A stretch of 64,000 nucleotides of DNA, from positions 124,001-188,000 of IMG/VR virus record IMGVR_UViG_3300046787_000200, one strand, 5' to 3'. Of this stretch, positions 1-57,976 are shown one piece after another (position 1 is the first letter of the stretch; each line of letters begins with the position of its first letter). The translations under genes were made by a program, and so were the position numbers. The notes under the pieces are model-generated. The model saw only the letters and a list, made by a program, of their open reading frames with translations. It searched no databases and was not told the origin of the DNA.

Positions 1-4
1 GGTC

Positions 5-193
5 GTGAAACTTACCCCCAAACACGGCTACGGGCCAAACTGCTATACTGTGGCTACAACTTCAGAATGGTATGACATTGTTATTTGGATGTTGGAAAAT
101 GAAGTGGATCACTGGCATGTGTCTACTGGTCCCGAAGGCTATGGATTTCAAGTAAAATCAAAGGTTGAATGGTTTTTGTTGAGGTGGAGTTAA
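5..193 (+). CDS. LRW-family small protein 1 (unknown function)
   Basis: GTG start; ends VEWFLLRWS; W-M-x-E helix; preceding bases (t)gg-tcg-tga look like the W-S-stop end of an upstream member. Confidence 0.8.
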   Translation: MKLTPKHGYGPNCYTVATTSEWYDIVIWMLENEVDHWHVSTGPEGYGFQVKSKVEWFLLRWS

Positions 194-429
194 TGGATTT
201 AGATACGGTAAAACGAATAGCATATAAGTGGTCCACTGAAAATAGTAATCTCAAACCAATGATTGGTGACGCAAGAGTTATTACCGGTGATTATATAGTT
301 GACTCAAGGATATATCATTTTGAAAAAGCTAGTGGTATAGAATTAGATGTTTCCGGACTTAATCTCATAACAGGATATAAAATAGTTGATGAAGAAAAGT
401 TTGCTTGGTGTGTATTGAGGTATAGTTGA
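193..429 (+). CDS. LRW-family small protein 2 (TGYK-x-x-DE subfamily)
   Basis: Start moved to ATG193 (TAATG overlap, GAGGTGG upstream); ends FAWCVLRYS. Confidence 0.8.
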   Translation: MDLDTVKRIAYKWSTENSNLKPMIGDARVITGDYIVDSRIYHFEKASGIELDVSGLNLITGYKIVDEEKFAWCVLRYS

Positions 430-746
430 TGCGTAAATTCATACATCGTATCTGGTGGAAACTTATGCCTGGCACAATCATTAAAGTGAAATGGCCTAAA
501 GGTAAGATTACAGTAGATCATAATGATTCGAGATGGTGTGATCTTGGTGGTGCAGTATGGATAGAGTTTGAAAGCGCGGATCCAAACGATCACTATCGTC
601 CATGGATGGAAGCAAATGTAGGTCGTCAGAATTGGGATTGGAGTTGGGATATGCGAGACAATGATGTTGCTGAAAATGTATTGTCTATCAAGTTTCGTAA
701 AGGTAAAGAACAATATGCTTCAATGGTGGCACTAAAATGGATGTAA
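429..746 (+). CDS. LRW-family small protein 3
   Basis: ATG429 (TGATG overlap); PWMEANVG...W...FRKGKEQYASMVALKWM. Confidence 0.8.
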   Translation: MRKFIHRIWWKLMPGTIIKVKWPKGKITVDHNDSRWCDLGGAVWIEFESADPNDHYRPWMEANVGRQNWDWSWDMRDNDVAENVLSIKFRKGKEQYASMVALKWM

Positions 747-928
747 AAGTGTTTAGTTTACCCGGTGGAATAGACGGCTGGGATCAAGTTGTAGAACGGA
801 TTACTTGGTGTAGAGAACAGTTTGGTGAACGAACATTTGCAGGTCCTTGGGAATATAATGCAGTTAGTCATATGATTATTGTGCGTGAAGAAAAGAATAT
901 TATGTTGTATATGTTGAGGTGGTTATGA
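737..928 (+). CDS. LRW-family small protein 4
   Basis: WCREQFG...W...NIMLYMLRWL; GGTGG upstream of ATG737. Confidence 0.8.
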   Translation: MDVKVFSLPGGIDGWDQVVERITWCREQFGERTFAGPWEYNAVSHMIIVREEKNIMLYMLRWL

Positions 929-1137
929 AAGAGTTTCCATACACTGTAACTACTAAGAAACTCAAGCACGAGGCCGAACAATGGTGCACCAAGAATATTG
1001 GGGAACGATGGTTTGCTGTGGGGAGAAAGACAGGCAATTGGACATGCTTTTGGGCAGGAAGAGATGATCCTAAAAGTTATCGCTGGCACTTTAAAAATGA
1101 AAAAGATGCTGTTATGTTTTCGTTGAGGTGGTTATGA
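925..1137 (+). CDS. LRW-family small protein 5
   Basis: ATG925 (ATGA overlap); WCTKNIG...RW...DAVMFSLRWL. Confidence 0.85.
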   Translation: MKEFPYTVTTKKLKHEAEQWCTKNIGERWFAVGRKTGNWTCFWAGRDDPKSYRWHFKNEKDAVMFSLRWL

Positions 1138-1340
1138 TAAAGAAACAATATCATAGGCATCCAACGTCAGTAGGTTATTTCAGTAACTTTATCAGAATGA
1201 ATGACCCCGAAGGTGTCATTGAAGATGAACTGAAGAAATACAATGCCTCAGTTGGTAAAAGCAAGAATAAAAACTATAAACTGAATGTTAAGTGGCACGA
1301 TGAAAAATTATATATGTTGTTTGTATTGAGGTATCAATGA
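1134..1340 (+). CDS. LRW-family small protein 6
   Basis: ATG1134 (ATGA overlap); ends EKLYMLFVLRYQ. Confidence 0.8.
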   Translation: MIKKQYHRHPTSVGYFSNFIRMNDPEGVIEDELKKYNASVGKSKNKNYKLNVKWHDEKLYMLFVLRYQ

Positions 1341-1546
1341 GAGAACTAAAGAAAGAACTGTGGCCCCACAAGGTAGAGCTTGATTTGGATCAAAGTCAGC
1401 AAAAGATTGTGGAAATAGAAACTTGGCTGGGCGAACATTATGGTATTTATAAAGGTCGCTGGAATCAGGTCAACCATTATGACCATACTACATTTTATTT
1501 CCGTTCAGGCAGTGATGCTACTATGTTTAGTTTGAGGTGGCAATGA
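1337..1546 (+). CDS. LRW-family small protein 7
   Basis: ATGA overlap; IETWLGEHYG...RW...DATMFSLRWQ. Confidence 0.85.
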   Translation: MRELKKELWPHKVELDLDQSQQKIVEIETWLGEHYGIYKGRWNQVNHYDHTTFYFRSGSDATMFSLRWQ

Positions 1547-1794
1547 CTATTACTAGTTCAATGTTACAACATCTTAATGTTAAGGTACCAAAGTTATACA
1601 AAGTTGTATATGCTAAAACAATAGACGGCGTTCAAGCACAATGGCAAGTAAGTTATAAAGATTATATTGTAAATGAATGGCTTAAGGAAAACTGCGAATA
1701 TCCTTACTATCATAGTCCCGGATATCTTACAGAAAAGTTTATTGAGTTTACAGATGAAAAAGAAGCGTTGTGGTTTAGTTTGAGGTTTGAATGA
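1543..1794 (+). CDS. LRW-family small protein 8
   Basis: ATG1543 (ATGA overlap); EWLKEN...EKEALWFSLRFE. Confidence 0.85.
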   Translation: MTITSSMLQHLNVKVPKLYKVVYAKTIDGVQAQWQVSYKDYIVNEWLKENCEYPYYHSPGYLTEKFIEFTDEKEALWFSLRFE

Positions 1795-2045
1795 TAGTAA
1801 GTGAAGGTAAAATATTCGGTGAAAGATACTATACAGTTGATCCTGAGTTGGTTGACTTCAATGACTTTGATCCAAACTTTTTTCATCAATCCTGGCACGA
1901 TATAGAAATATGGTGTATCAAAACATTTGGATGCACCCCTGCAAATGGTGTTTGGGAACCTCACGGTAGATGGTATATGAACAATAGTAAGTTTTGGTTC
2001 AAAGATAAAAAAGATTTAGAATGGTTCTTACTAAAATGGGAATGA
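1791..2045 (+). CDS. LRW-family small protein 9
   Basis: ATGA overlap; WCIKTFG...RW...FWFKDKKDLEWFLLKWE. Confidence 0.85.
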   Translation: MIVSEGKIFGERYYTVDPELVDFNDFDPNFFHQSWHDIEIWCIKTFGCTPANGVWEPHGRWYMNNSKFWFKDKKDLEWFLLKWE

Positions 2046-2278
2046 AGATACATCACTATAAGCGTTTTGCCAATAACACATATTATTTTGTCGCGGCTTT
2101 TCCTGCACCAGATATAAATCTAACATATGAGATTAGAAAATGGTGTTATGAAGCGTACGGGTTACCGAATTATAAACCCGATACTGTTGAAACTCGTTGG
2201 GAAGATGATGTAAAATATGGTGAGATTACATTTGAAAGAGAAAGTGATTTAACTTTGTTTTTATTGAGGTGGGAATGA
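2042..2278 (+). CDS. LRW-family small protein 10
   Basis: ATG2042 (ATGA overlap); WCYEAYG...RW...ESDLTLFLLRWE. Confidence 0.85.
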   Translation: MKIHHYKRFANNTYYFVAAFPAPDINLTYEIRKWCYEAYGLPNYKPDTVETRWEDDVKYGEITFERESDLTLFLLRWE

Positions 2279-2478
2279 GTTTTATTGAAGAAGGAATGCG
2301 TGAATATTCATTCTATGGTGCAGGACAAGGTAGTGATAAGTTTTATGAAATGACTACTTGGTGTAGTGAAAACTTATATCACGGTGGTTATTATGAACCT
2401 AACTGGTGGTATGAATACCCATTCATATTCTTTAGTGATGAAAAAGAGTATATGTTATTTTTATTGAGGTGGCAATGA
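2275..2478 (+). CDS. LRW-family small protein 11
   Basis: ATG2275 (ATGA overlap); WCSEN...EKEYMLFLLRWQ. Confidence 0.85.
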   Translation: MSFIEEGMREYSFYGAGQGSDKFYEMTTWCSENLYHGGYYEPNWWYEYPFIFFSDEKEYMLFLLRWQ

Positions 2479-2738
2479 GAGACAATATCCACGAATTTAT
2501 TGACTCTTGGAAAGTATACGACAGACAGCACAAGTGTGATGTTGACTGGAACAGTCGTTTTAAATGTGGCGGCTATTATTCTGCTAAAGTCAGTAGATCC
2601 AGTATAACAGACGAATGGAATCAAATGCACAAATGGTGCGAGGAGTATATCGGCAAGCAAAGATATGCATGGACAGGTTCTACTTTTTGGTTTGAGACTA
2701 AAGAGGATACAGCATTTTTTATATTGAGATGGCTATGA
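2475..2738 (+). CDS. LRW-family small protein 12
   Basis: ATG2475 (ATGA overlap); WCEEYIG...FWFETKEDTAFFILRWL. Confidence 0.85.
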   Translation: MRDNIHEFIDSWKVYDRQHKCDVDWNSRFKCGGYYSAKVSRSSITDEWNQMHKWCEEYIGKQRYAWTGSTFWFETKEDTAFFILRWL

Positions 2739-2947
2739 GTAAAATAGATTATTGTAATATACCAGTAGTCTATACGAAAGTATCTACTGAACATCATTAT
2801 AATATGCGTCAATGGTTAGTTGATAACATAGACCCGGCTTGTTATGATGCTGAGGATTTCAGCCCAGTTAATGAAGATTACAGTAAAAGAACTATTTGGT
2901 TTGCTAATCATAAAGATGCAGTGTGGTTTAGATTAATATGGGAGTGA
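2735..2947 (+). CDS. LRW-family small protein 13
   Basis: ATG2735 (ATGA overlap); WLVDNI...DAVWFRLIWE. Confidence 0.8.
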   Translation: MSKIDYCNIPVVYTKVSTEHHYNMRQWLVDNIDPACYDAEDFSPVNEDYSKRTIWFANHKDAVWFRLIWE

Positions 2948-3168
2948 CCATAAAAGTATACCAGCCATATGCACCTGTGTTACAATGGCTACAAGACAAT
3001 GTAGGAACTATGCTACATTATAAGCCTATCATCTTTTGGCACGGCGAAGGTTGGCATTTAACAGTAGGACATGAAGTTGCAAACAGAGGACAAATGGGTA
3101 GACCTTATTGTACAGTAGAGTTTGATGATGAAGAAAAGGCAACTTGGTTTGGATTAGTATGGGGTTAA
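2944..3168 (+). CDS. LRW-family small protein 14
   Basis: GTG2944 (GTGA overlap) or ATG2938; WLQDNVG...EEKATWFGLVWG. Confidence 0.8.
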   Translation: MTIKVYQPYAPVLQWLQDNVGTMLHYKPIIFWHGEGWHLTVGHEVANRGQMGRPYCTVEFDDEEKATWFGLVWG

Positions 3169-3416
3169 AAGAAGATATATTAGATAAGATGAGTAAGCAG
3201 ATTTCTAATCATGTTGATTGGGAAATATTAGCCGATGTGAAAATAAGCGGCGGCTGGACCTGTGTTAAGTTAGATAGATATCTTAGTAATGAACACGCAG
3301 TTGATATTAAAATTTGGATCGAAGAAAACTGCACCGGTAAGTATGACTACTCGAATACAAAGTTTTTATTTGAAAAGAAGCAAGATGCTGAGTGGTTCAT
3401 ATTAAGATGGCAGTAA
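3159..3416 (+). CDS. LRW-family small protein 15
   Basis: ATG3159; WIEENC...FEKKQDAEWFILRWQ. Confidence 0.8.
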   Translation: MGLKEDILDKMSKQISNHVDWEILADVKISGGWTCVKLDRYLSNEHAVDIKIWIEENCTGKYDYSNTKFLFEKKQDAEWFILRWQ

Positions 3417-3646
3417 TGTATGAACATTATGATGAAGCTGGGTGGGAACATACACAACCGGGTTGGTATGAATGTAAAGTTAGAGCAGAACACATAGACA
3501 AATATGATGAAATGACCAAATGGTTAGAAAGTAATATTGGCAAATACAAAAGACATTGTAGATGGTGTGTAACTGATACTAATGTAGTTAGTTTTAAGTT
3601 TAGATATGAACGAGATTATATATTATTCACATTGAGGTGGAGTTAA
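3416..3646 (+). CDS. LRW-family small protein 16
   Basis: ATG3416 (TAATG overlap); WLESNIG...RW...ERDYILFTLRWS. Confidence 0.85.
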   Translation: MYEHYDEAGWEHTQPGWYECKVRAEHIDKYDEMTKWLESNIGKYKRHCRWCVTDTNVVSFKFRYERDYILFTLRWS

Positions 3647-3934
3647 ATGGAATTCTTTTTTACTGAAGCTGGCAACAATAGACCGTTCTTTATTTACAGA
3701 CTTAAAGTAGATGAAATAACCACTGAGATGCACGAGTGGTGTCTTGACTATCCTAGTAAAGGACCGTTCAGTCGTTGGCATATTGACCGTAAGATGATAA
3801 CAGATTCTAAAACAAACACAGTAACAAAGTTTGATATAGTTATTCAGTTTGAACTTAAGGATGCTTATCTTGCGTTTATGTATGCATTTGCAGGTCATAT
3901 TTTAAAAGACTTAACCTGGAAAGAATATAGATGA
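3647..3934 (+). CDS. Degenerate LRW-family protein with C-terminal extension
   Basis: EMHEWC...SRW...FELKDAYLAFMYAF, then about 14 extra residues; GAGGTGG upstream. Confidence 0.7.
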   Translation: MEFFFTEAGNNRPFFIYRLKVDEITTEMHEWCLDYPSKGPFSRWHIDRKMITDSKTNTVTKFDIVIQFELKDAYLAFMYAFAGHILKDLTWKEYR

Positions 3935-4215
3935 AAATACTACTGAATAGAAGTATTGGTGATAACATTAGACTAAACAGATATAAAAGAAATATGGAAT
4001 ACTCTATTATTAAAGACGGTTGTGATACTTATCCGTGGATGGAAACATTTGTTATCTGGCCACGCAGAAGTGTAAGTGGAGCACCATTATTCTTTACTAA
4101 AGCATATAAGCGTCAAGTATGGGTAGTATGGGGTAGCGGTTTTCACATGGAACCGATAGTTCAATACGCTACAGCATTTGATTTATTAACATATGACGAC
4201 AATAAAACCGTTTAA
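3931..4215 (+). CDS. Hypothetical protein
   Basis: ATGA overlap; no family motif seen. Confidence 0.6.
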   Translation: MKILLNRSIGDNIRLNRYKRNMEYSIIKDGCDTYPWMETFVIWPRRSVSGAPLFFTKAYKRQVWVVWGSGFHMEPIVQYATAFDLLTYDDNKTV

Positions 4216-4471
4216 AGATTATGATGACGATGATCCTAATATAGAACAGCGGAAAAAACGCTGGGACTATTGGGCGGCATTAAAACAGATTCGTAAAGAA
4301 TATATGACTGATATGAAGTCACTTGATGGACAGTTTGATGCATTTGACTTTGAAGATTACATTGAAGAAAACTATGGAATTAAGATGAACATAGTAGATG
4401 GAAACATTACTGATGGATACAAAGTAATGGATGAAAAGAAGTATCTAATATTTTTATTAAAATTCCAATGA
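4193..4471 (+). CDS. LRW-family small protein 17 (same subfamily as 193-429)
   Basis: DGYKVMDEKKYLIFLLKFQ aligns with TGYKIVDEEKFAWCVLRYS. Confidence 0.8.
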   Translation: MTTIKPFKDYDDDDPNIEQRKKRWDYWAALKQIRKEYMTDMKSLDGQFDAFDFEDYIEENYGIKMNIVDGNITDGYKVMDEKKYLIFLLKFQ

Positions 4472-4818
4472 ACAACTCACCTTTTGAAATATACAAAACA
4501 GAAAGAAATCGCTGGGTAACACACTGGCCTACATTTAAAAACATCAGAGATACAGAGACCGGTATAAAACTATTAGATATACTATTTGGTCAAATAAAAT
4601 GTGAGGAAGTGGGATTAGCACTACTTGTGCGTAATGGTGAAATAGATACACTGTGGATTAGTTATAGTGCTTGGGCAACTGATGTTAATAACTATTTCTC
4701 CGAATACTTACAAGATATGTATGAGATTCGTGGTGTAGTATTTCATAAACAACACGAAGCAGAACAACTACAAGATATATTAGAGAAGAAATATATTTGG
4801 AAAGTATTACAAGCATGA
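4468..4818 (+). CDS. Hypothetical protein, possibly a degenerate LRW member
   Basis: ATGA overlap; ends EKKYIWKVLQA. Confidence 0.65.
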   Translation: MNNSPFEIYKTERNRWVTHWPTFKNIRDTETGIKLLDILFGQIKCEEVGLALLVRNGEIDTLWISYSAWATDVNNYFSEYLQDMYEIRGVVFHKQHEAEQLQDILEKKYIWKVLQA

Positions 4819-5075
4819 CATTCTTCCCTAAGCCGGAGATTATAGAAATCGAACCAATCTACATTCGTAAATTCAAAAAGACCGTTTCAGTTGACAATAT
4901 ATGGATAGATAGTGTATTCTATGAGATTACAAAGTTTCCTATGGGTAGACAAAATACTATAGATTGGTTAACTGAACGTTATGGATATATGAAGTATTCC
5001 AATACATGGTGGTATACACATAATGGAATCTGTATGAACGATAAAATTTACACACATTATAAATTAATGGAATAA
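4815..5075 (+). CDS. Degenerate LRW-family protein
   Basis: ATG4815 (ATGA overlap); IDWLTERYG...WW...DKIYTHYKLME. Confidence 0.7.
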   Translation: MTFFPKPEIIEIEPIYIRKFKKTVSVDNIWIDSVFYEITKFPMGRQNTIDWLTERYGYMKYSNTWWYTHNGICMNDKIYTHYKLME

Positions 5076-5077
5076 TT

Positions 5078-5641
5078 ATGGCAAATGACATTATGATAGA
5101 CATTGAGAGTTTAGATACAACACCTAACTGTGTTATCTTAACTATTGGCGCGGTGCGCTTTGACCCTAAAGGTAGCGGAGTTGTTGAACGATTAGAACTA
5201 CGACCTACAGTAGAAGATCAAACAGAGATTTACGGGAGAAGTATCAATGAAGATACATTGCGTTGGTGGAGTGAACAGAGCCCTGAAGCACTTGAAGAAG
5301 CAATGGGAGACAATGGACGAGTCCCGTTTAAAGAGTGTATGGAGACCCTTTATAAGTTTTGTTGGAACCGTCGTGCTGTTTGGAGTAATGGTGCACCTTT
5401 TGACTTAGTTGTGATGGAGAATGCGTGGCGACAAGTTAGCGATAAGCCTAATCCTATTCCCTGGCCTTTCTGGTCTATGCGTGATACACGAACATTGTGG
5501 GAAATAACAGGTGTCAGTCTTAAAGACGGTGGACATACTACAAGTCACAAAGCAGTTGAAGATGCCGAAAGACAAGCTATTGTTGTACAAAAAGCGTATA
5601 CTAAACTTATCAAAGCAGAATTGGTAGCACCCCCAAAATGA
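5078..5641 (+). CDS. DEDD-family 3'-5' exonuclease (Rv2179c/RNase AS-like)
   Basis: MIDIESL (ExoI), WSNGAPFD (ExoII), RDTRT, H-KAVEDA (ExoIII). Confidence 0.85.
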   Translation: MANDIMIDIESLDTTPNCVILTIGAVRFDPKGSGVVERLELRPTVEDQTEIYGRSINEDTLRWWSEQSPEALEEAMGDNGRVPFKECMETLYKFCWNRRAVWSNGAPFDLVVMENAWRQVSDKPNPIPWPFWSMRDTRTLWEITGVSLKDGGHTTSHKAVEDAERQAIVVQKAYTKLIKAELVAPPK

Positions 5642-6219
5642 GAATTGATTCAGACGTAGATATTGACTTCGGTGATAGAGATAAGTTATTACAGCTTATC
5701 AAGCATACACCAGCGGCAATGCGTAATGCTAATCCTATACGTAAACATAATACAGGTGTTTACGTCACAGATATACCATATGATCCAGTAAATGATATGG
5801 CTGCAATTGATTATGTTGAAGCAGAGAAGCGTGGTTATTTTAAGTTAGATTTGTTGAATGTTCATGTTTATAGTCAAGTACGTGATGAGATGCATTTAGT
5901 TGAGTTGATGCGTGAACCTAACTGGGATAACTTAAAGAATAAAGACTTTGTAGAGAAACTGATCCACTTGGGAAATCATTATTATTCATTGGAAAAGATG
6001 CCTGAGCGTGTGAATAGTATTCCAAGATTAGCAATGTTTCTAGCTGTAATTAGACCTGCTAAAAAGCATTTGATAGGAAAGACTTGGAAGGAAGTAAGTG
6101 AAACTATTTGGGATAAAGGGTCAGATGGTTATAGCTTTAAAAAGAGTCACGCTATTGCGTATGCACAATTAGTCGTTGTACATATGAATCTACTTACACA
6201 ATCCTCTTTACTAAAGTAA
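5638..6219 (+). CDS. dnaE: Miniature DNA polymerase III alpha-like protein, catalytic (C-terminal) half
   Basis: SDVDIDF, HNTGVYV, FKLDLLN, LAVIRPA and GYSFKKSHAIAYA match the DnaE motifs PDFDVDF, HAGGVVI, KFDFLG, ALFRPG and GYGFNKSHSAAYA in order. Confidence 0.8.
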   Translation: MRIDSDVDIDFGDRDKLLQLIKHTPAAMRNANPIRKHNTGVYVTDIPYDPVNDMAAIDYVEAEKRGYFKLDLLNVHVYSQVRDEMHLVELMREPNWDNLKNKDFVEKLIHLGNHYYSLEKMPERVNSIPRLAMFLAVIRPAKKHLIGKTWKEVSETIWDKGSDGYSFKKSHAIAYAQLVVVHMNLLTQSSLLK

Positions 6220-6574
6220 TACTACGGCGTTTACTTCTACGTTTATTGAGTTCGCTTATACTACAAGTAGGACCGTGAATTATAGTAAGACTTTTGTTAT
6301 TGAAGGTTCTTAGATAGGGTTTGAAAATACTCCATTCTTCCTTCAAAAACAGATTTATGGGTATAAGTCGATTGCTTTCCCACCACCAAATATCACCTAA
6401 TTCTAAGAATTTTTCTTTTATTACAGTGTCTGCTATTGCACCGTAATCATATATTGTAGTAACAATATCATCCCTGTTTTGTACTATACCTACGTAGTCC
6501 TGGTTGGCATGCGAACATATTGTTATGAACGGGTGATTTAGAGTTAATTTGTTGAAAAATTCGTTTTGAATCAT
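6194..6574 (-). CDS. Hypothetical protein
   Basis: 126 aa ORF; TAAATA box 6 nt before ATG; convergent overlap with the dnaE half. Confidence 0.7.
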   Translation of the reverse strand: MIQNEFFNKLTLNHPFITICSHANQDYVGIVQNRDDIVTTIYDYGAIADTVIKEKFLELGDIWWWESNRLIPINLFLKEEWSIFKPYLRTFNNKSLTIIHGPTCSISELNKRRSKRRSITLVKRIV

Positions 6575-26634: not shown

Positions 26635-26663
26635 TTGACAATAAATATGGGCTGTGTTATAAT
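26635..26663 (+). promoter_or_regulatory. Consensus sigma70 early promoter
   Basis: TTGACA-17nt-TATAAT with TG extension; AAAGGAG SD before ATG26691. Confidence 0.9.
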
Positions 26664-30244: not shown

Positions 30245-33200
30245 ATGGCATTAACCTCACCAGGCGTAGAAGTAACGATTACAGATGAAAGTCAATACTT
30301 ACCAGCCCCAACAAATTCAGTCCCACTAGTTCTATTAGCAACTGCACAAAATAAAGCAAATGCTAGTGGTACAGGTGTAGCAGTGGCAACAACCGCAGCC
30401 AACGCTAATAAATTATATCAAGTAACAAGTCAACGTGATTTAGTAAATTTATATGGTACACCGTTCTTCTACACAACGACCAATGGTACGCCAATTCAAG
30501 GTTACGAATTAAATGAATACGGTTTATTAGCGGCTTATAGCTTGCTAGGTGTTACAAATCGTTGTTATGTATTACGTGCAGATATTGACCTAGCAAGTTT
30601 AGTAGGTCAAACAGGTCGTCCAACTGGTGCACCAACTGACGGTACATACTGGTTAGATAGTACTACTACAACTTGGGGTATCTACGAGTTCAATGCTACT
30701 ACTGGTCAATTCTCATTACAGAATCCTATCGTAATTACTGATGCAGCCGATATGTCAGCCGGATTCCCATTAGCAAGTATTGGTAGTATTGGTGATTATG
30801 CAGTTAACGCAATAGAAGTAACAACCGACGCTACAAATGCTGATAGAACATATTATTATAAGACAACTGACAATGCATGGGCTATCTTAGGTGGTTCAGC
30901 ATGGAAAGCAGATGTTCCTGCAGTAATTTCAAGCTTGTCTAATCCAGACGTTGCCGCTGGCACAATGATTATTAGCTTGTCAGGTTCTGTATCTGTAACA
31001 CTAACTATCGGTGGTAGTGATACAGTAGGTGACGTTGCAACTGCAATTAATGGTTTAGGTTGGGATTATCTAGCAGCCGAAGTTCGTAGTGGTAAATTAT
31101 GTTTATTCACACGCCAACGTTTAACTACAGGTAGTGCGAACGCTTATATTGGTTTGAGTGGTACATCATTGACTTCTATGGGTCTAACTGCAGGTGATTA
31201 TTATACACCAACTGTATCATATGGTACAAGTGCGCAGATGCCATTATGGACAGCAAGTCAAACAACTCCTCGTCCAACAGGATCTGTTTGGATTAAAGTC
31301 GGTGCTGCCGGTACTGGATTAGCTCCAGTAATGTCACAATATAGTACTGCTACAGCATCATGGATATCAAAATCAGTTGCATTAGCAACAAGTGATTGGG
31401 CAGTTACTTCAACATTAGATTCAACAGGCGGTCAAGCTATCCCTGCAGGATCAATATATGGACAATATTATTATAACGGTACTAGCACAACTGCTCCGGT
31501 ATACTTCTGGGAAAGACTAGCTACAGGTGCTACAGTAGTAACAGGTGATAATACAACACCAGATTTCGCATCAGGTCCATATTACATGAACGTATATGTG
31601 TCAGTTCCCGGTAGTTCATCACTAAGTTCTGCATATAATTTCACATTAGCAGGTAGTAGTAATGCTACTGATTTCGTTACCGCATGGTATGCGGCAGGTA
31701 TTCCTTACACGACCGCAGTTGTAACTACAGACGGTGCAATTCAAGTGACTCATACTGAGGGTGGCGAAATTATCATGGACGATACTGTAAATTCATCATT
31801 TGCAGGAACAGGTATTTCTAATGGTCTAATAGTTGAAGCAGGTTTTACATCTGGTACAACTACAGGTGCTAAGTACGGTCCTACTGTAAGTGCTACGTTT
31901 TCAGGTGTTGCGCAAGCAGGAACACAAACAGGAACATCAGGTTCAGGTGCTACATTTAATATAGAATCTATCTATAACATCTACATTCCTGTAGGTGACG
32001 GTGTTCAAGCCGGTGGTAGTGGTTATGCGGTAGGTGATACAATCACAATCGCAGGTACAGTGTTAGGTGGATCATCTCCTGCAAACGATTTAGAAGTTGT
32101 AGTAACTGCAGTATCTGCTGGTGCATTGTCAGCAGTAACATTTGTTTCAGGTGAACCTGAAGCACAGTATAGAACTCAATTAAGTAACTGGGTAGAATTC
32201 ACCTATACTGCTAATGAAGGTGCTCCTAGTGAAGCCCCTGCTAATAATACAAACTGGTTCTATAGTGTTGTTGACCAAGTTGATATTATGGTTCAAAAAG
32301 CTGGTGCCTGGATTGGTTATAAAAACACAGCATATGATTCAACAGGTGCTCCAGTTGCGGCTTCAGGCGCAGGCGCTACAGATCCAAATGGTCCTATAAT
32401 AAGTGCTACTGCACCTACAACTCAAAGTGACGGTACTGCATTGGTATACGGTGACTTGTGGATTGACACAAGCAACTTAGAAGTATATCCAGTAATCAGC
32501 CGTTGGGAAAGCGTTGATGGAGAAAATACATGGGTATTAATTAACAATGCAGACCAGGTAAGTAGCACTGGTGCATTATTTGCCGATGCTCGTTGGGCAA
32601 CAAGTGGTAACGTAAGTCCAGTTGATGATCCTATACCAACTATCGTTAGTTTGCTAACAAGCAACTACTTAGATTTAGATGCTCCTGATCCAAGTCTATA
32701 TCCACAAGGTATGTTGTTGTTTAACACACGCCGTAGTGGTTATAACGTTAAGCAATTCCGTGTTAATTATTTTAACAATACTAACTTCCCAGGTGAAACA
32801 CTGCCTGCACAAACTGATGCATGGGTGACAGTAAGTGGTAATTCTTCTAACGGTGCACCATATATGGGTCGTGCGGCACAACGTGCTATGGTTGTACAAG
32901 CATTGCGTTCAGCAATCGATACAAACACCGACATACGTGATGAAGATAATTACTTCAATTTAATGGCTACACCTAACTATCCAGAACTACAGCCTAACAT
33001 GGTTGTGTTGAATGCAGATCGTGGTGAGACAGGCTATATTATCGGTGATACTCCATTAGGATTAGCTGATAGTGCTACTGACATTCAAGCTTGGGCTAAC
33101 AACGATGCAGGTGCTACAAGCACAGGTGAAACTGGTTTAGTTACACGTAATACTTACTTGGGTCTATTCTATCCAAGCGGAATTACAAATGACTTGTCAG

Positions 33201-33805
33201 GCAATGAAGTTGTTGTTCCAGCATCACATATGATGTTACGCACATTCTTACGTAACGACACAGTGGCTTATCCTTGGTTAGCGGCAGCAGGTACTCGTCG
33301 TGGTAACATTGACAATGCATTGAACATTGGTTACTTAGATCGTCAGACTGGCGAATTCCAAGCAATTAAGACACGTTTAGGAATACGTGATGTATTGTAT
33401 ATTAATCAAATCAATCCATTAGTATTCTTTACTGGTGTTGGTTTGTTGAACTATGGTAACAAAAACAGTTTCAATTCACAAAGCGCATTAGATAGAACTA
33501 ACGTTGCACGTTTAGTTAACTATATCCGTCGTCAATTGACATTGGCAGCAAGACCGTTCGTATTTGAACCTAACGATGCATTAACACGTAATAGTATTGC
33601 AGGCGTAATTCAAACATTGATGGTTGACTTAGTTGCTAAACGTGGTCTCTATGATTATCTTGTAGTTTGTGATGAGTCAAACAACACACCGGCAAGAATT
33701 GATAGAAATGAATTGTGGGTAGACGTTGCAATTGAGCCTGTTAAGGCAGCTGAATTCATCTACATCCCGGTTCGTGTTTTAAACACAGGTGAATTATCAC
33801 AGTAA
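30245..33805 (+). CDS. Contractile tail sheath protein (T4 gp18-like)
   Basis: SPGVEV N-terminus; WLAAAGTRRG, DESNNTPARIDRNELWVDVAIEPVKAAEFI C-terminus. Confidence 0.95.
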   Translation: MALTSPGVEVTITDESQYLPAPTNSVPLVLLATAQNKANASGTGVAVATTAANANKLYQVTSQRDLVNLYGTPFFYTTTNGTPIQGYELNEYGLLAAYSLLGVTNRCYVLRADIDLASLVGQTGRPTGAPTDGTYWLDSTTTTWGIYEFNATTGQFSLQNPIVITDAADMSAGFPLASIGSIGDYAVNAIEVTTDATNADRTYYYKTTDNAWAILGGSAWKADVPAVISSLSNPDVAAGTMIISLSGSVSVTLTIGGSDTVGDVATAINGLGWDYLAAEVRSGKLCLFTRQRLTTGSANAYIGLSGTSLTSMGLTAGDYYTPTVSYGTSAQMPLWTASQTTPRPTGSVWIKVGAAGTGLAPVMSQYSTATASWISKSVALATSDWAVTSTLDSTGGQAIPAGSIYGQYYYNGTSTTAPVYFWERLATGATVVTGDNTTPDFASGPYYMNVYVSVPGSSSLSSAYNFTLAGSSNATDFVTAWYAAGIPYTTAVVTTDGAIQVTHTEGGEIIMDDTVNSSFAGTGISNGLIVEAGFTSGTTTGAKYGPTVSATFSGVAQAGTQTGTSGSGATFNIESIYNIYIPVGDGVQAGGSGYAVGDTITIAGTVLGGSSPANDLEVVVTAVSAGALSAVTFVSGEPEAQYRTQLSNWVEFTYTANEGAPSEAPANNTNWFYSVVDQVDIMVQKAGAWIGYKNTAYDSTGAPVAASGAGATDPNGPIISATAPTTQSDGTALVYGDLWIDTSNLEVYPVISRWESVDGENTWVLINNADQVSSTGALFADARWATSGNVSPVDDPIPTIVSLLTSNYLDLDAPDPSLYPQGMLLFNTRRSGYNVKQFRVNYFNNTNFPGETLPAQTDAWVTVSGNSSNGAPYMGRAAQRAMVVQALRSAIDTNTDIRDEDNYFNLMATPNYPELQPNMVVLNADRGETGYIIGDTPLGLADSATDIQAWANNDAGATSTGETGLVTRNTYLGLFYPSGITNDLSGNEVVVPASHMMLRTFLRNDTVAYPWLAAAGTRRGNIDNALNIGYLDRQTGEFQAIKTRLGIRDVLYINQINPLVFFTGVGLLNYGNKNSFNSQSALDRTNVARLVNYIRRQLTLAARPFVFEPNDALTRNSIAGVIQTLMVDLVAKRGLYDYLVVCDESNNTPARIDRNELWVDVAIEPVKAAEFIYIPVRVLNTGELSQ

Positions 33806-54841: not shown

Positions 54842-54869
54842 TTGACAATTAGCACAAAGGTGTTATAAT
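54842..54869 (+). promoter_or_regulatory. Sigma70 promoter for dnaJ (leaderless geometry)
   Basis: TTGACA-16nt-TATAAT with TG; ATG 6 nt downstream. Confidence 0.8.
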
Positions 54870-55699: not shown

Positions 55700-57976
55700 T
55701 TGACTAATTCACCCGAAATCGAAAATATCATTGAACAAGCAATTGCTTTTGCTAAAGAGCGAAAGCATGAATATTGCACCGTAGAACACTTGCTATTAGC
55801 ATTAGTTACTCACACCCCATTTAAGAAATGCTTAGATAGTTTTGGTGCTGATTCTGATATGCTTATCCAAGAAGTAGGAGCATATTTAGATGGACAACAT
55901 TCAATAGAACTTAAAGGCGTGACTAGTGAAGAAGTTCACCCACGCAAAACAAATAGCCTTGAACGATTAATGAATCGTTCAGTTACACAAGTATTGTTTA
56001 CTGGTCGTAGACAAGTTACTACAATTGACTTGTATCTAAGTATGGCAAGTGAGGGCAATAGTCATGCACATTACTTCTTGTTGAAATACGGTATCAATAA
56101 ACAAGAGTTCGTGGCTCATTGGCAGAAAACTTATAAAGGTGCTGAGTTCACTACAAAACTAAGTGATGGTCAAGCAGACGAAATCCTCGAAGAATATACG
56201 ACTAACTTAAGCGACCTAGCACGTAAAGGTAAGATTGAACCATTGATCGGTCGTAGTAAAGAACTTGATGAAATCGTTAATGTACTTGCTAAACGATTCA
56301 AAGCTAACGTGTTGATGGTAGGTGATCCTGGCGTAGGTAAAACGGCTATTGCTGAAGGTCTTGCTAATATGATTGCTATGGGTGATTGCCCAGAGTTTAT
56401 TCTTAACCACGAAGTATATTCACTTGAAGTAGGTGCATTGCTTGCTGGTAGTAAATATCGCGGTGACTTTGAAGAAAAAGTCAAACAAGTATTAGAAGCA
56501 CTTAATACTAAAAAGAAAGCTATTCTATTCATTGACGAAGCACATACTATGAGTGGCGCAGGCTCTGGCAATGCAGGAGGTCCTGACTTTGCAAACATGA
56601 TTAAGCCAGCAATTACTAAAGGTACATTGAAAGTTATTGCTTCAACTACTTGGGAAGAATACTACGAAAGTTTTGAGAAGGATCGTGCATTGATGCGTAG
56701 ATTCTATCGTGTATCTATTGATGAACCTACTAAAGATACGACTATTAGTATTCTTACTGGACTAAGCACACGATTGAACGACTTCCATGAAGTAGAGATT
56801 CTACCTGAAGCAGTTACTGCCGCAGTGGAAAGTGCTGGACGATATATTCATGACCGTAAGAATCCTGATAAGAGTATTGACTTGCTTGATGCGGCTTGTG
56901 CCCGTCAGAAAGTTGATGGTAATAAAGGTGCTCAGATTACTAAAGATATGATTTTTCAACAAGTTGAACGCTTTACAGGTGTCCCTGCTGATAAACTTAG
57001 CGGTGATAACATGGATCGTATTCAAACACTTGAAGTTAATGTCAAGGGTAAATTGTATGGTCAAGATGAAACAGTTGATAAAGTACTTGAACGTATCTAT
57101 GTCAGTTTTGCAGGTATCGGTAGTGAAAGTAAACCAACTGCAAGTTTCTTGTTCTTGGGCCCAACAGGTACAGGTAAAACAGAATTGGCTAAGTTGTTGA
57201 GTAAGAACCTTGACATGCCATTGCTCAAATATGATATGTCAGAGTATGGTGAGAAACACTCTGTATCAAGTTTGATCGGTCCGCCCCCTGGCTATGTTGG
57301 TTTCGGTGACAGTCAAGTAAGTGGTGGACGACTAATTAATGACTTGAGCAAGAACCCACATAGTATCTTGTTGTTTGACGAAGTTGAGAAAGCACACCCT
57401 GATATCTTTAACATTTTCTTACAGATGCTTGATGAAGGTCGTATCACTGGATCTAATGGTAAAGAAGTTAACTGTAAGAACTGTGTTATCATCTTAACAA
57501 GTAACTTGGGTAGTAGTGATAGTGAACGCAATAACATTGGCTTTGGCTCACAAGAGAAGACAGGTGAAGATGATAAAGCACTAAAAGAATTCTTCAAGCC
57601 TGAATTCAGGAATCGTTTAGATTTAGTATGTAAGTTTAATAAGCTTGATATGCTTGCGATTAAGAAGATTGTTGTTAAGTTTGCAGAACAGTTGAAAGAT
57701 ACATTGTTGGATAAACACAACATTACATTGAACTTGAGTGAACCAGTAGTTGAGTATTTGGCTGAACAGGGTTATGATAAGAAGATGGGTGCTCGACCAC
57801 TAGCTCGTAAGATTGATGAGTTGATTCGTGTTCCGTTATCTAAGAAGATTCTGTTTGAACGTATTAAGAACTCAATTATTACTGCGGTAATTAATGATGA
57901 AGGTTCTATTGAATACAATGTTGTGCAAAAATCAACAGCAAGAGTAGGTGAAGATGGCATTATTGAGATCAGTTAA
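55700..57976 (+). CDS. clpA: ClpA-type Hsp100 AAA+ unfoldase
   Basis: Single Clp-N domain (TVEHLLLAL), two NBDs (GDPGVGKT, GPTGTGKT), IGF loop, GARPL, no ClpB middle domain. Confidence 0.9.
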   Translation: MTNSPEIENIIEQAIAFAKERKHEYCTVEHLLLALVTHTPFKKCLDSFGADSDMLIQEVGAYLDGQHSIELKGVTSEEVHPRKTNSLERLMNRSVTQVLFTGRRQVTTIDLYLSMASEGNSHAHYFLLKYGINKQEFVAHWQKTYKGAEFTTKLSDGQADEILEEYTTNLSDLARKGKIEPLIGRSKELDEIVNVLAKRFKANVLMVGDPGVGKTAIAEGLANMIAMGDCPEFILNHEVYSLEVGALLAGSKYRGDFEEKVKQVLEALNTKKKAILFIDEAHTMSGAGSGNAGGPDFANMIKPAITKGTLKVIASTTWEEYYESFEKDRALMRRFYRVSIDEPTKDTTISILTGLSTRLNDFHEVEILPEAVTAAVESAGRYIHDRKNPDKSIDLLDAACARQKVDGNKGAQITKDMIFQQVERFTGVPADKLSGDNMDRIQTLEVNVKGKLYGQDETVDKVLERIYVSFAGIGSESKPTASFLFLGPTGTGKTELAKLLSKNLDMPLLKYDMSEYGEKHSVSSLIGPPPGYVGFGDSQVSGGRLINDLSKNPHSILLFDEVEKAHPDIFNIFLQMLDEGRITGSNGKEVNCKNCVIILTSNLGSSDSERNNIGFGSQEKTGEDDKALKEFFKPEFRNRLDLVCKFNKLDMLAIKKIVVKFAEQLKDTLLDKHNITLNLSEPVVEYLAEQGYDKKMGARPLARKIDELIRVPLSKKILFERIKNSIITAVINDEGSIEYNVVQKSTARVGEDGIIEIS

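What the first reader, a model, noticed from the sequence alone, without database searches (positions are those of the whole stretch)
5..5075. Tandem array of about 20 highly diverged paralogous microproteins (LRW family)
Seen: 17 ORFs of about 60-105 aa end in L-x-(W/Y/F) followed by exactly one residue and the stop. Most share an internal W(C/L/M)xE/D/K-x-x-G helix, a later W, and F-x-F-x-x-E/K-x-D-A-x-x-F before the end. Two or three more are degenerate. N-termini and loops are unalignable by eye. Sixteen are consecutive, most are joined by ATGA/TAATG/TGATG-type overlaps, and the first 8 nt of the window look like the end of another member. Inference: a constant scaffold with hypervariable surfaces, expressed as one coupled operon, suggests a diversified library. 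Candidates are anti-defence or host-takeover factors, or interchangeable adaptors docking on one partner through the conserved C-terminal helix. I cannot assign the family to any named domain.
Basis: partly seen in the sequence, partly recalled or inferred. Interest (0 to 1): 0.88.

Follow-up and report, generated by a model that had tools for sequence, protein, structure and literature searches.

The report
Tandem small-gene family in jumbo phage
A 352-kb uncultured phage carries about 20 neighbouring copies of a previously unnamed small protein family whose conserved tail also encodes the ribosome-binding site and start of the next gene; the family is very common in uncultured phages, varies greatly in copy number between close relatives, and has no known function.

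Summary
Window 5-4471 holds 17 plus-strand genes of 62-105 aa ending L-x-(W/Y/F)-x-stop (18 of 29 segments here against 3 of 563 elsewhere, p about 5e-24). Three more members lie just upstream in the source contig, a 352-kb jumbo myovirus. Fourteen members pass leave-one-out HMM tests. g02, g03, g06, g19 are divergent, g17 is doubtful, and g18, g20, g21 are unrelated.

The fold is a confident beta-alpha-beta-beta-alpha module (pLDDT 88). It has no match in Pfam, PHROGs, NCBIfam, PDB sequences or PDB folds, and no match in isolated phages. The family is nevertheless very large, with 1,691 clusters at 50% identity.

Arg is AGG in 10 of 12 motif positions against 2.8% genome-wide. Family-wide, AGG is used in 73 of 101 members with a junction start and 0 of 20 without.

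Paralogues are old (40% identity or less). Orthologues are under purifying selection (dN/dS 0.10-0.36). Relatives with 88-98% identical flanking exonuclease hold 1-19 members, gained or lost as whole genes.

Best reading: a translationally coupled set of specialised small binding proteins in a hyperplastic region, probably for host interaction or counter-defence. That function is inferred, not shown. There is no evidence of active hypervariation.

The parts
1..8 (+). Last codons and TGA stop of upstream family member u3 (142 aa, L001 4503-4931, ends MLRWS). Its stop overlaps the GTG start of g01 (GTGA).
5..193 (+). g01, family member, 62 aa, ends LLRWS
   Evidence: leave-one-out HMM E=3e-7. 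No orthologue in 79 related loci.
193..429 (+). g02, divergent member (g02/g19 subtype), 78 aa, ends VLRYS. Only the C-terminal third aligns.
   Evidence: leave-one-out E=2.7. hhalign 82% over 20 columns.
429..746 (+). g03, member with a long N-terminal extension, 105 aa, ends ALKWM
   Evidence: leave-one-out E=0.7, but hhalign 95% over the whole domain. Its AAA TGG creates the ATG start of g04.
737..928 (+). g04, family member, 63 aa, ends MLRWL
   Evidence: leave-one-out E=3e-5. A 95% identical relative, P0004, exists elsewhere.
925..1137 (+). g05, family member, 70 aa. This is the modelled member.
   Evidence: leave-one-out E=1.6e-9. AF2 pLDDT 88, beta-alpha-beta-beta-alpha.
1134..1340 (+). 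g06, divergent member, 68 aa, ends VLRYQ. It lacks the W-x-x-E-N-x-G helix motif.
   Evidence: leave-one-out E=0.004. hhalign 90%, C-terminal 21 columns.
1337..1546 (+). g07, family member, 69 aa
   Evidence: leave-one-out E=1.7e-11
1543..1794 (+). g08, family member, 83 aa, ends SLRFE
   Evidence: leave-one-out E=5e-7
1791..2045 (+). g09, family member, 84 aa, ends LLKWE. Orthologues occur in 27 related loci.
2042..2278 (+). g10, family member, 78 aa
   Evidence: leave-one-out E=5e-10
2275..2478 (+). g11, family member, 67 aa, pI 4.3, 30% aromatic residues
   Evidence: leave-one-out E=1.1e-11
2475..2738 (+). g12, family member, 87 aa
   Evidence: leave-one-out E=1.9e-6
2735..2947 (+). g13, family member, 70 aa (alternative start at 2729), ends RLIWE
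   Evidence: leave-one-out E=1.9e-7
2944..3168 (+). g14, family member, 74 aa (alternative start at 2938), ends GLVWG
   Evidence: leave-one-out E=2e-4. hhalign 98%.
3159..3416 (+). g15, family member, 85 aa, with an N-terminal helix extension (SKQISNHVDWEILADV type). Orthologues occur in 29 loci.
3416..3646 (+). g16, family member, 76 aa (alternative start at 3407). It is the most widely conserved member, with orthologues in 56 loci.
   Evidence: leave-one-out E=6.5e-10. dN/dS 0.10-0.13.
3647..3934 (+). g17, 95 aa, possible degenerate member that lacks the L-R-W end
   Evidence: leave-one-out E=0.018. hhalign 47%.
3931..4215 (+). g18, 94 aa, unrelated small gene in the same operon
   Evidence: hhalign 1.6%. 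Orthologues at 58-76% identity in about 6 loci.
4193..4471 (+). g19, divergent member, 92 aa, ends LLKFQ. It has an acidic DYDDDDP N-terminus and a long helix. Orthologues occur in 51 loci.
   Evidence: leave-one-out E=0.0013. AF2 pLDDT 71 with a shared alpha-beta-beta-alpha core.
4468..4818 (+). g20, 116 aa, unrelated conserved small gene (58 loci)
   Evidence: hhalign 5%
4815..5075 (+). g21, 86 aa, small gene with membership not shown
   Evidence: hhalign 32%. Leave-one-out E=0.24.
5078..5641 (+). Rv2179c-like 3'-5' exonuclease. It is the conserved right-hand anchor of the variable region.
   Evidence: Pfam PF16473 E=5.5e-33. 88-100% identical in 80 loci.

Best explanation
**What it is (shown).** Window 1-5075 is the larger part of a hyperplastic accessory region in the replication module of a 352-kb uncultured jumbo myovirus.
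- The region lies between a conserved 240-aa gene and an Rv2179c-like exonuclease.
- It holds about 20 members of one old, unnamed family of 60-140-aa proteins.
- The members share an aromatic-core beta-alpha-beta-beta-alpha fold and have no catalytic-looking conserved residues.

**How it is expressed (sequence shown, mechanism inferred).** The genes form one polycistron with no internal terminators, downstream of a conserved sigma70-type promoter. They are translated by coupling.
- The last five codons of each gene (typically TTG AGG TGG nnA TGA) carry the SD GAGG(TG) 5 nt before the next gene's ATG, which overlaps the stop.
- Where Arg or Lys is encoded nnA, the pair nnA TGG itself makes the next start codon.
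- Each cassette therefore brings the initiation site for its downstream neighbour.

**How it evolves (pattern shown, mechanism inferred).** Whole cassettes are gained and lost while gene order stays collinear. The only DNA homology between cassettes is the roughly 50-nt 3' boundary. I infer that this boundary is the recombination substrate and keeps any new junction translatable.

**What it does (inferred).** Each paralogue is a specialised small binding protein with its own constrained surface. Together they form a strain-variable set that acts on host or competing-element proteins (host takeover or counter-defence).
For: - **Family and fold:**
- **Family size, and confined to uncultured phages:** 1,691 representatives at E<=1e-3. 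All sources call them hypothetical. Viruses make up 99-100% of the nearest Atlas clusters. BFVD hits are only uncharacterised proteins of uncultured Caudovirales.
- **Dual coding:**
  - Arg is AGG in 10 of 12 motif positions, against 13 of 468 in long genes and 2 of 49 elsewhere in the array genes (Fisher p=4e-13).
  - Across 190 non-redundant members, AGG is used in 73 of 101 with a junction start and 0 of 20 without (p=5e-10).
  - 180 of 190 members supply a start for a following ORF of at least 40 aa.
  - The same junction occurs in an unrelated phage type.
  - Other genes of this genome use AGGA/GGAG-type SDs.
  - Background on SD-assisted termination-reinitiation at ATGA/TGATG: PMC6728339.
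- **Transcription:** there are no terminators in the array. A 12/12 extended sigma70 promoter lies 1.8 kb upstream and is conserved in 41 of 43 loci.
- **Turnover:** the interval is 659-6280 bp and holds 1-19 members at 88-98% exonuclease identity. Gene order is collinear and differences are whole-gene presence or absence.
- **Boundary repeat:** 11+6 copies of a roughly 50-nt 3' end at 60-85% identity are the only repeats.
- **Selection and specialisation:** dN/dS is 0.10-0.36. Paralogues are 40% identical or less, with closer relatives elsewhere. Paralogue-specific regions are conserved among orthologues.
- **Binder-like character:** mostly acidic (pI 4.3-6.4), W at 4-9% against 0.95% background, and no conserved catalytic-type residues.
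Against: - There is no direct evidence for any target or phenotype. No member is homologous to a known anti-defence, takeover or regulatory protein.
- The host is unknown and no isolate carries the family.
- Expression timing is not established, because perfect sigma70 promoters also precede other, possibly late, genes in the window.
- Translational coupling and boundary-mediated recombination are inferred from sequence only. Breakpoints cannot be resolved at the divergence of the available relatives.
- A few members are basic (pI above 9), so a nucleic-acid partner is not excluded.
- Some distant members carry a capsid-protein-like N-terminal peptide, which points to a different (virion) location for at least a subset.
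Confidence: 0.45

Rival explanations
1. Members are virion-packaged proteins. They would be targeted to the capsid, and perhaps ejected with the DNA, rather than being cytoplasmic early proteins.
For: - 3 of 139 distant representatives match the N-terminal 7-49 positions of Pfam Gp23, and 2 match PHROG 'major head protein'.
- The motif LIA..L.GVQPM..P.G.iF is visible in P0091, P0076 and P0113.
- The ESM Atlas lists a 113-member cluster with 13% Gp23.
- These proteins are not mis-called capsid genes, because they sit in runs of small genes.
Against: - The matches are below Pfam's gathering score (20.8 and 20.3 against 24.4 bits).
- They concern only a few long members. No window member has this peptide, and no large window ORF carries the motif.
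- The array lies in the replication module, far from the structural genes.
Confidence: 0.12
2. Members are small nucleic-acid-binding accessory factors of replication, recombination or translation (a ferredoxin-like or RRM-like module). That would explain their position between helicase, exonuclease, polymerase fragment, primase and DnaB.
For: - The genomic position.
- The weak top fold hits are RRM, PII and EF-G domain-type beta-alpha-beta-beta-alpha(-beta) modules.
- Four members have pI above 9.
Against: - The fold hits are not significant (E>0.5, TM<0.5).
- Most members are acidic.
- In other phage types the arrays sit among unrelated genes such as NAD synthase, SOD, eIF-1a and phosphatase.
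- A core replication role is hard to square with copy numbers of 1 to 19 between close relatives.
Confidence: 0.15
3. This is an actively diversifying 'library': hypervariable surfaces generated by targeted mutagenesis or strong positive selection.
For: A conserved scaffold with very divergent N-termini and loops, and a large family.
Against: - Orthologue dN/dS is 0.10-0.36.
- Variable regions are conserved among orthologues.
- There are no template/variable repeat pairs and no near-identical copies.
- Paralogues are 40% identical or less, and each has closer relatives in other genomes.
Confidence: 0.03
4. The cassettes are mainly selfish or nearly neutral passengers. Because each carries the translation signals for its neighbour, insertions and deletions are harmless and copies accumulate with little benefit to the phage.
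For: - The self-contained junction design.
- Extreme copy-number variation, down to a 3-gene minimal version.
- Several members have no orthologue in 79 related loci.
Against: - Purifying selection acts on every orthologue pair that could be measured.
- Paralogue-specific surfaces are conserved.
- Some members (g16, g19) are kept in more than 50 loci.
- Family-wide retention in several phage lineages.
Confidence: 0.1
5. The shared C-terminus is only a nucleotide-level artefact of SD plus ATGA junctions, and the ORFs are not a true protein family.
For: The L-R-W codons coincide with GAGGTG and the stop-start overlap.
Against: - Similarity spans about 55 residues, with leave-one-out E down to 1e-11.
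- The common fold is predicted with confidence.
- L-R-W is kept in 19 of 34 members that lack a junction start, and there it uses non-SD codons.
- The aromatic position varies W/Y/F independently of the SD.
Confidence: 0.01

Closest known systems
Hyperplastic regions (HPRs) of T4-type phages with PeSL mobile regulatory cassettes (Arbiol et al. 2010, PMC2839356; Comeau et al. 2014, PMC4122927)
   Same: - A block of small, mostly function-unknown, non-essential-looking genes wedged between conserved core genes.
- Whole-gene indels distinguish close relatives.
- A short conserved sequence recurs at gene boundaries and is a plausible recombination substrate.
   Different: - PeSLs are intergenic promoter plus stem-loop terminator units flanking unrelated ORFans.
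- Here there is no intergenic space, no excess of promoters and no terminators.
- The repeated boundary is the coding 3' end of homologous genes, and it carries translation signals (SD/ATG) rather than transcription signals.
Lineage-specific expansions of small domains in jumbo phages, for example about 35 zinc-ribbon copies in Bacillus phage G (Iyer et al. [quoted passage not shown]
   Same: Many copies of one small domain in one jumbo phage genome, with function unknown or only guessed.
   Different: - The copies here are not highly similar (40% identity or less).
- They are not lineage-specific. The family has 1,691 clusters at 50% identity and occurs across several phage types.
- There is no metal-binding Cys/His pattern.
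- Copy number ranges from 1 to 19 among near relatives.
Translational coupling by termination-reinitiation at ATGA/TGATG overlaps with an intragenic SD (Huber et al. 2019, PMC6728339)
   Same: Stop-start overlaps of 4 or 1 nt, with an SD inside the 3' end of the upstream gene.
   Different: Here the SD, spacer, start and stop are fixed inside a conserved protein motif of a whole gene family. The coupling signal is therefore inherited with the domain, and the codon choice (AGG against AGA/CGA) tracks the type of start used. Coupling itself was not tested.
Anti-defence or accessory gene islands of phages (anti-CRISPR loci, T4 internal proteins, T7/T5 early genes). This comparison is from general knowledge, not tested here.
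   Same: Small, often acidic proteins with strain-variable content, placed in operons of small genes.
   Different: Those islands usually contain unrelated proteins rather than one paralogous family. No sequence or fold similarity to any known member was found.

Membership tests
T4-type hyperplastic region with PeSL cassettes | Variable gene content confined between conserved core genes in close relatives | tested here: met
   The interval between the 240-aa anchor and the exonuclease is 659-6280 bp and holds 1-19 members. Gene order is collinear.
T4-type hyperplastic region with PeSL cassettes | Intergenic promoter-early plus stem-loop terminator motifs flanking the variable genes | tested here: not met
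   Genes overlap by 1-4 nt. Promoter-like sites number 53 against 56 expected, terminator-like sites 5 against 4.9 expected, and none lies between array genes.
Jumbo-phage lineage-specific expansion by recent duplication | Many copies of one domain in one genome | tested here: met
   About 20 members (17 in the window plus 3 upstream).
Jumbo-phage lineage-specific expansion by recent duplication | Copies highly similar to each other and closest to each other | tested here: not met
   The best paralogue is 40% identical or less. Most members have relatives elsewhere at 50-95% identity. No long DNA repeats.
Termination-reinitiation coupled operon | Stop-start overlaps (ATGA, TGATG, TAATG) between co-directional genes | tested here: met
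   Most junctions in the window. 145 of 190 non-redundant members family-wide.
Termination-reinitiation coupled operon | SD motif in the 3' end of the upstream gene at functional spacing | tested here: met
   GAGG(TG) lies 5 nt before the ATG. AGG is selected at 10 of 12 positions against 2.8% background. 73 of 101 against 0 of 20.
Termination-reinitiation coupled operon | Translation of the downstream gene depends on translation of the upstream gene | not testable with these tools
   This needs reporter assays.
Diversity-generating retroelement target | Template/variable repeat pair and a nearby reverse transcriptase | tested here: not met
   No such repeats in 1-5100. No RT among the annotated window ORFs. 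The rest of the 352-kb genome was not examined.
Pfam PF07068 Gp23 (T4-type major capsid protein) | Match above the gathering score over the capsid fold | tested here: not met
   No window member matches. A few distant members match only profile positions 7-49, at 20-21 bits against the 24.4 cut-off.
Ferredoxin-like / RRM / ACT-type beta-alpha-beta-beta-alpha-beta domains | Significant structural superposition on a solved member | tested here: inconclusive
   The topology resembles the fold minus its last strand, but the best Foldseek result is E 0.5 with TM below 0.5. The Atlas structural neighbours (EFG_C) have TM 0.55 to a proxy model.
Any curated protein family (Pfam, PHROGs, NCBIfam) or solved structure | Sequence match at curated or significant threshold | tested here: not met

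The most novel reading that the evidence does not exclude
The family is a 'plug-and-play' gene cassette system. It is a very abundant, unannotated phage protein module whose C-terminal helix codons double as the ribosome-binding site and start of whatever follows. Cassettes can therefore be inserted, deleted or swapped at their conserved 3' boundaries without ever breaking expression. This would let large uncultured phages carry combinatorial, strain-specific sets of specialised binders, most plausibly inhibitors of host defence or host-takeover factors. Some relatives would be redirected into the capsid by a capsid-protein-like N-terminal peptide.
Probability: 0.25. Interest if true: 0.78.

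Novelty: new variant of a known kind. Interest (0 to 1): 0.6.

Why it matters
- **An unnamed, abundant family.** It defines a very large protein family (at least 1,691 clusters at 50% identity, up to about 20 copies per genome). The family is absent from Pfam, PHROGs, NCBIfam and the PDB, and has no significant structural neighbour, so it is a sizeable piece of viral dark matter that can now be named and modelled.
- **A clean dual-coding example.** The Arg codon of a conserved protein motif switches between AGG (which makes an SD) and nnA (which makes an ATG), depending on how the next gene starts. This is directly testable.
- **A possible mechanism for accessory-region plasticity.** It suggests how accessory gene sets stay expressible while they are reshuffled, complementing the PeSL model of T4-type phages.
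- **Candidates for function screens.** If members prove to be counter-defence or takeover factors, the family would provide hundreds of diverse small inhibitors.

Tried and rejected
**Searches that found nothing**
- Megablast of 8 kb against 50,697 phage records gave no match.
- tblastn of three members against the same collection at E<=1 gave no match, so no isolated phage could be used.
- Pfam, PHROGs and NCBIfam on the members, and on 139 distant representatives, gave nothing beyond the marginal Gp23 N-terminal hits.
- PDB sequence profiles A1 and A2 gave nothing.
- Foldseek of both models against PDB was not significant. BFVD returned only uncharacterised relatives.
- ESM Atlas returned only unnamed viral clusters.
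- Literature searches for a prior description found none.

**Technical dead ends**
I used the exonuclease as the anchor instead.
- The DNA junction probe in 596 Gb of bacterial and archaeal genomes gave 120 single hits in unrelated taxa. None contains a family member. These are chance matches, so no host or prophage clue came from them.

**Readings considered and rejected**
- DGR or recent duplication.
- A minus-strand gene explaining the region. Minus-strand ORFs are 132 aa or shorter and discontinuous.
- The 'VQPM' in g09 orthologues as a capsid motif. There it is part of the domain's first strand.

**My own errors**
- My first coupling classifier missed the TAATG/TGATG junctions. It was corrected.

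Full report
**1. What is there**

The plus strand of window 1-5075 is packed with 21 small ORFs, followed by a 187-aa exonuclease gene. The minus strand has only short, discontinuous ORFs, and GC skew is strongly positive.

The ORF listing reports many '-10' overlaps. These arise only because it takes the first in-frame GTG, which lies inside the L-R-W codons. Using the ATG starts, the junctions are ATGA, TAATG, TGATG or GTGA.

Seventeen ORFs (g01-g16 and g19) end L-x-(W/Y/F)-x-stop. The motif is present in 18 of 29 plus-strand segments of the array, against 3 of 563 elsewhere in the window (p=4.5e-24).

The 17-member alignment and a 139-member alignment of distant relatives give the same consensus: W-C-x-E-N-x-G, then R-W, then F-x-F-x-x-E-x-D-A-x-x-F-x-L-R-W.

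**2. Membership**

| Group | Members | Evidence |
|---|---|---|
| Supported by leave-one-out HMMs | g01, g04, g05, g07-g16 (E 1e-4 to 1e-11); g06 (0.004) and g19 (0.001) more weakly | |
| Divergent, profile-profile against the distant-relative alignment | g14 98%, g03 95%, g06 90%, g02 82% (C-terminal part only), g19 64% | |
| Doubtful | g17 47%, g21 32% | |
| Unrelated | g20 5%, g18 2% | |

The positive control g16 scored 99.7%. No other copy exists in the remaining 59 kb.

**3. Source and true extent**

The neighbouring exonuclease retrieved the source contig, IMGVR_UViG_3300046787_000200 (352,012 bp), and 79 related contigs. The tail sheath is about 44-47% identical to those of the PA5oct, Atu_ph07 and Phosso jumbo myoviruses.

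In the source contig three more members precede the window.

The gene order around the array is:
- a UvsW-like helicase and three conserved unknown genes;
- the array;
- the exonuclease, a DnaE-like fragment, primase and DnaB.

So the array sits inside the replication module.

**4. Fold and database status**

AlphaFold2 on the paralogue alignment gives a confident model of g05 (pLDDT 88, pTM 0.74) with strand-helix-strand-strand-helix topology.

The divergent g19, modelled from 31 orthologues plus its paralogue g02, keeps the helix-strand-strand-helix core behind a long N-terminal helix (pLDDT 71).

Nothing known matches:
- Foldseek finds nothing significant in the PDB. The best E is 0.5, among RRM- and PII-like noise.
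- In BFVD it finds only uncharacterised proteins of uncultured Caudovirales.
- Pfam, PHROGs, NCBIfam and PDB sequence profiles give nothing.
- Three tblastn searches of 50,697 phage records found no homologue.

Yet an exhaustive profile search finds 1,691 representatives of 50%-identity clusters at E<=1e-3, nearly all 50-140 aa. All sources call them hypothetical, and the nearest Atlas clusters are 99-100% viral.

**5. The dual-coded junction (the main new point)**

Most junctions read TTG AGG TGG nnA TGA. In these 15 nt, the codons for L-R-W contain GAGGTG, the last codon's A begins the next ATG, and that ATG overlaps the TGA stop. This explains why exactly one residue follows the aromatic.

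- **Codon usage in the window.** AGG is 2.8% of Arg codons in 36 long genes and 2 of 49 elsewhere in the array genes. At the motif position it is 10 of 12 (p=4e-13). TTG is likewise enriched for the Leu (11 of 17 against 22%).
- **Family-wide.** Across 190 non-redundant members from all fetched loci, 145 have stop-start overlaps.
- **AGG tracks the start type.** Among members with Arg, AGG is used in 73 of 101 that have a start codon at the junction and in 0 of 20 that do not (p=5e-10).
- **The alternative start.** In the members without a junction start the codon is AGA, CGA or AAA, so nnA TGG itself forms an ATG. In 29 of 39 such cases this ATG opens the next ORF.
- **Overall.** 180 of 190 members supply the next gene's start.
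- **The protein constraint is separate.** L-R-W is retained without SD codons, and the aromatic varies W/Y/F, so the protein-level constraint is real and distinct from the SD constraint.
- **SD use elsewhere in the genome.** Other genes in this genome use GGAG/AGGA-type SDs.
- **Other phage types.** An unrelated phage type (L081-84) uses the same junction.
- **Background.** SD-assisted termination-reinitiation at such overlaps is established in bacteria (PMC6728339). Its operation here is inferred.

**6. Evolution**

- **Old paralogues.** Paralogues in the array are 40% identical or less, and most have 50-95% identical relatives elsewhere. The array is therefore not a recent amplification.
- **Purifying selection.** Orthologue pairs give dN/dS of 0.10-0.36, against 0.02-0.05 for the exonuclease.
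- **Specialised surfaces.** Regions that vary across the family are conserved among orthologues of one paralogue. For g19 the N-terminal region scores 0.76 against 0.91 for the core; for g14 the loops score 0.81 against 0.82.
- **Copy-number variation.** Among phages whose exonuclease is 88-98% identical, the interval between the two anchors is 659-6280 bp with 1-19 members.
- **Collinear backbone.** Maps show u1-u2-[variable]-g15-g16-(g18)-g19-g20 with whole-gene presence or absence. Some loci also have insertions of larger unrelated genes.
- **A wider hot spot.** A more distant relative (L209) has PhyH and DnaJ-like genes at the same place.
- **Widely kept and window-only members.** g16, g19 and g20 are kept in more than 50 loci. 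g01, g04, g08, g11 and g12 have no orthologue in this set.
- **Boundary repeat.** The only DNA repeats are the roughly 50-nt 3' ends of the genes (11+6 copies at 60-85% identity). There are no DGR-like pairs.

I infer that these boundaries are where cassettes recombine. This is by analogy with PeSL-mediated shuffling in T4-type hyperplastic regions (PMC2839356, PMC4122927), although here the element is coding and carries translational signals.

**7. Expression**

Promoter-like and terminator-like sites are at chance level, and none separates array genes. A perfect extended sigma70 promoter lies 1.8 kb upstream. A sigma70-like site at that position is conserved in 41 of 43 loci.

This fits one polycistron read by host RNA polymerase. 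It does not fix the timing, because equally perfect promoters occur at 26635 and 54842.

**8. Function**

The conserved positions are aromatic or hydrophobic core residues or helix caps. No catalytic-type pattern exists. Members are aromatic-rich (W 4-9% against 0.95%) and mostly acidic, with four basic exceptions.

Taken together, the following point to specialised binding modules used in host interaction, takeover or counter-defence:
- small size and accessory status;
- strain-level turnover;
- purifying selection;
- paralogue-specific conserved surfaces.

This is an inference with no direct support (about 0.45 including the mechanistic parts).

The rivals are virion-targeted proteins, nucleic-acid-binding replication accessories, selfish passengers, an actively diversifying library, and a pure SD artefact. 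The first rests on a capsid-protein-like N-terminal peptide in a few distant members. The last two are effectively refuted.

**9. Comparison and novelty**

Two related kinds are already known: variable accessory regions in large phages, and copy-number expansions of small domains in jumbo phages (PMC7824862; PMC13282480). This case differs in four ways:
- the family is unnamed and its fold unmatched;
- it is ancient and widespread rather than lineage-specific;
- its copies are highly diverged;
- its conserved C-terminus doubles as the initiation site of the next gene.

I rate it a new variant of a known kind, with interest 0.6.

Noticed in passing
Distant relatives P0091, P0076, P0113, P0126, P0092 (not in the window): Some long family members carry an N-terminal peptide resembling the N-arm of T4-type major capsid proteins (LIA..L.GVQPM..P.G.iF). 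It matches Pfam Gp23 positions 7-49 at 20-21 bits, below the 24.4 cut-off. This could be a capsid-targeting or capsid-mimicking peptide.
   Followed up: partly
window 3159-3413 (g15); orthologues of g09/g15 in L006, L014, L016, L067, L070; P0048, P0085, P0106: A second, recurrent N-terminal extension (EEI..Q.adQmAKDID..vL.SALGW) precedes the domain in two subfamilies. Its role is unknown.
   Followed up: partly
P0005, P0012, P0020, P0027, P0001: Single ORFs containing two family domains in tandem. This looks like a cassette pair fused by loss of the stop between them.
   Followed up: no
window 5638-6219: A 193-aa ORF matches PHROG 11778 'DNA polymerase' (E 2e-60) and has a DnaE-like C-terminal motif. 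It appears to be a stand-alone fragment of a polymerase, overlapping the exonuclease stop by 4 nt.
   Followed up: no
window 4193-4471 (g19): A nearly invariant acidic run DYDDDDP and a conserved helix (RW.YW.ALK..R.EYM) at the N-terminus across 31 orthologues. This is the most constrained member of the locus.
   Followed up: partly
L006 3810-6016; L049 5719-6921: Large unrelated genes (330+406 aa; 401 aa) are inserted inside the array in some relatives. They were not annotated and could be mobile elements or other accessory genes.
   Followed up: no
L209 10802-11939: In a more distant relative the same hot spot holds PhyH-like (dioxygenase) and DnaJ CXXCXGXG-like genes next to a few family members.
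   Followed up: no
window 26635-26663 and 54842-54869 (+); L001 2281-2309: Perfect 12/12 sigma70 promoters with an extended -10 TG. This suggests the phage relies on host RNA polymerase for several transcription units.
   Followed up: partly
L001 4469-4497 (just left of the window): An 11/12 sigma70-like site inside the 3' end of member u2, directly before the only intergenic gap of the array (upstream of u3). It could be an internal promoter.
   Followed up: no
window 30245-33805: The tail sheath protein is 1,186 aa. Relatives align to only about 60% of it, so it carries a large extra region.
   Followed up: no
window 55700-57976: A 758-aa protein matches PHROG 4871 'ATP-dependent protease' over its full length (E 1.5e-231), so this is a phage-encoded Lon/AAA+-type protease.
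   Followed up: no
window 6194-6574 (-): The only clear minus-strand gene near the array (126 aa, PHROG 11637, unknown function). A minus-strand sigma70-like site (11/12) lies at about 5084.
   Followed up: no
L081-L086: Other large uncultured phages that carry the family also encode eIF-1a-like (PF01176), SOD, NAD synthase, WYL_2 and phosphatase genes. Their runs of small overlapping genes extend over more than 10 kb.
   Followed up: partly
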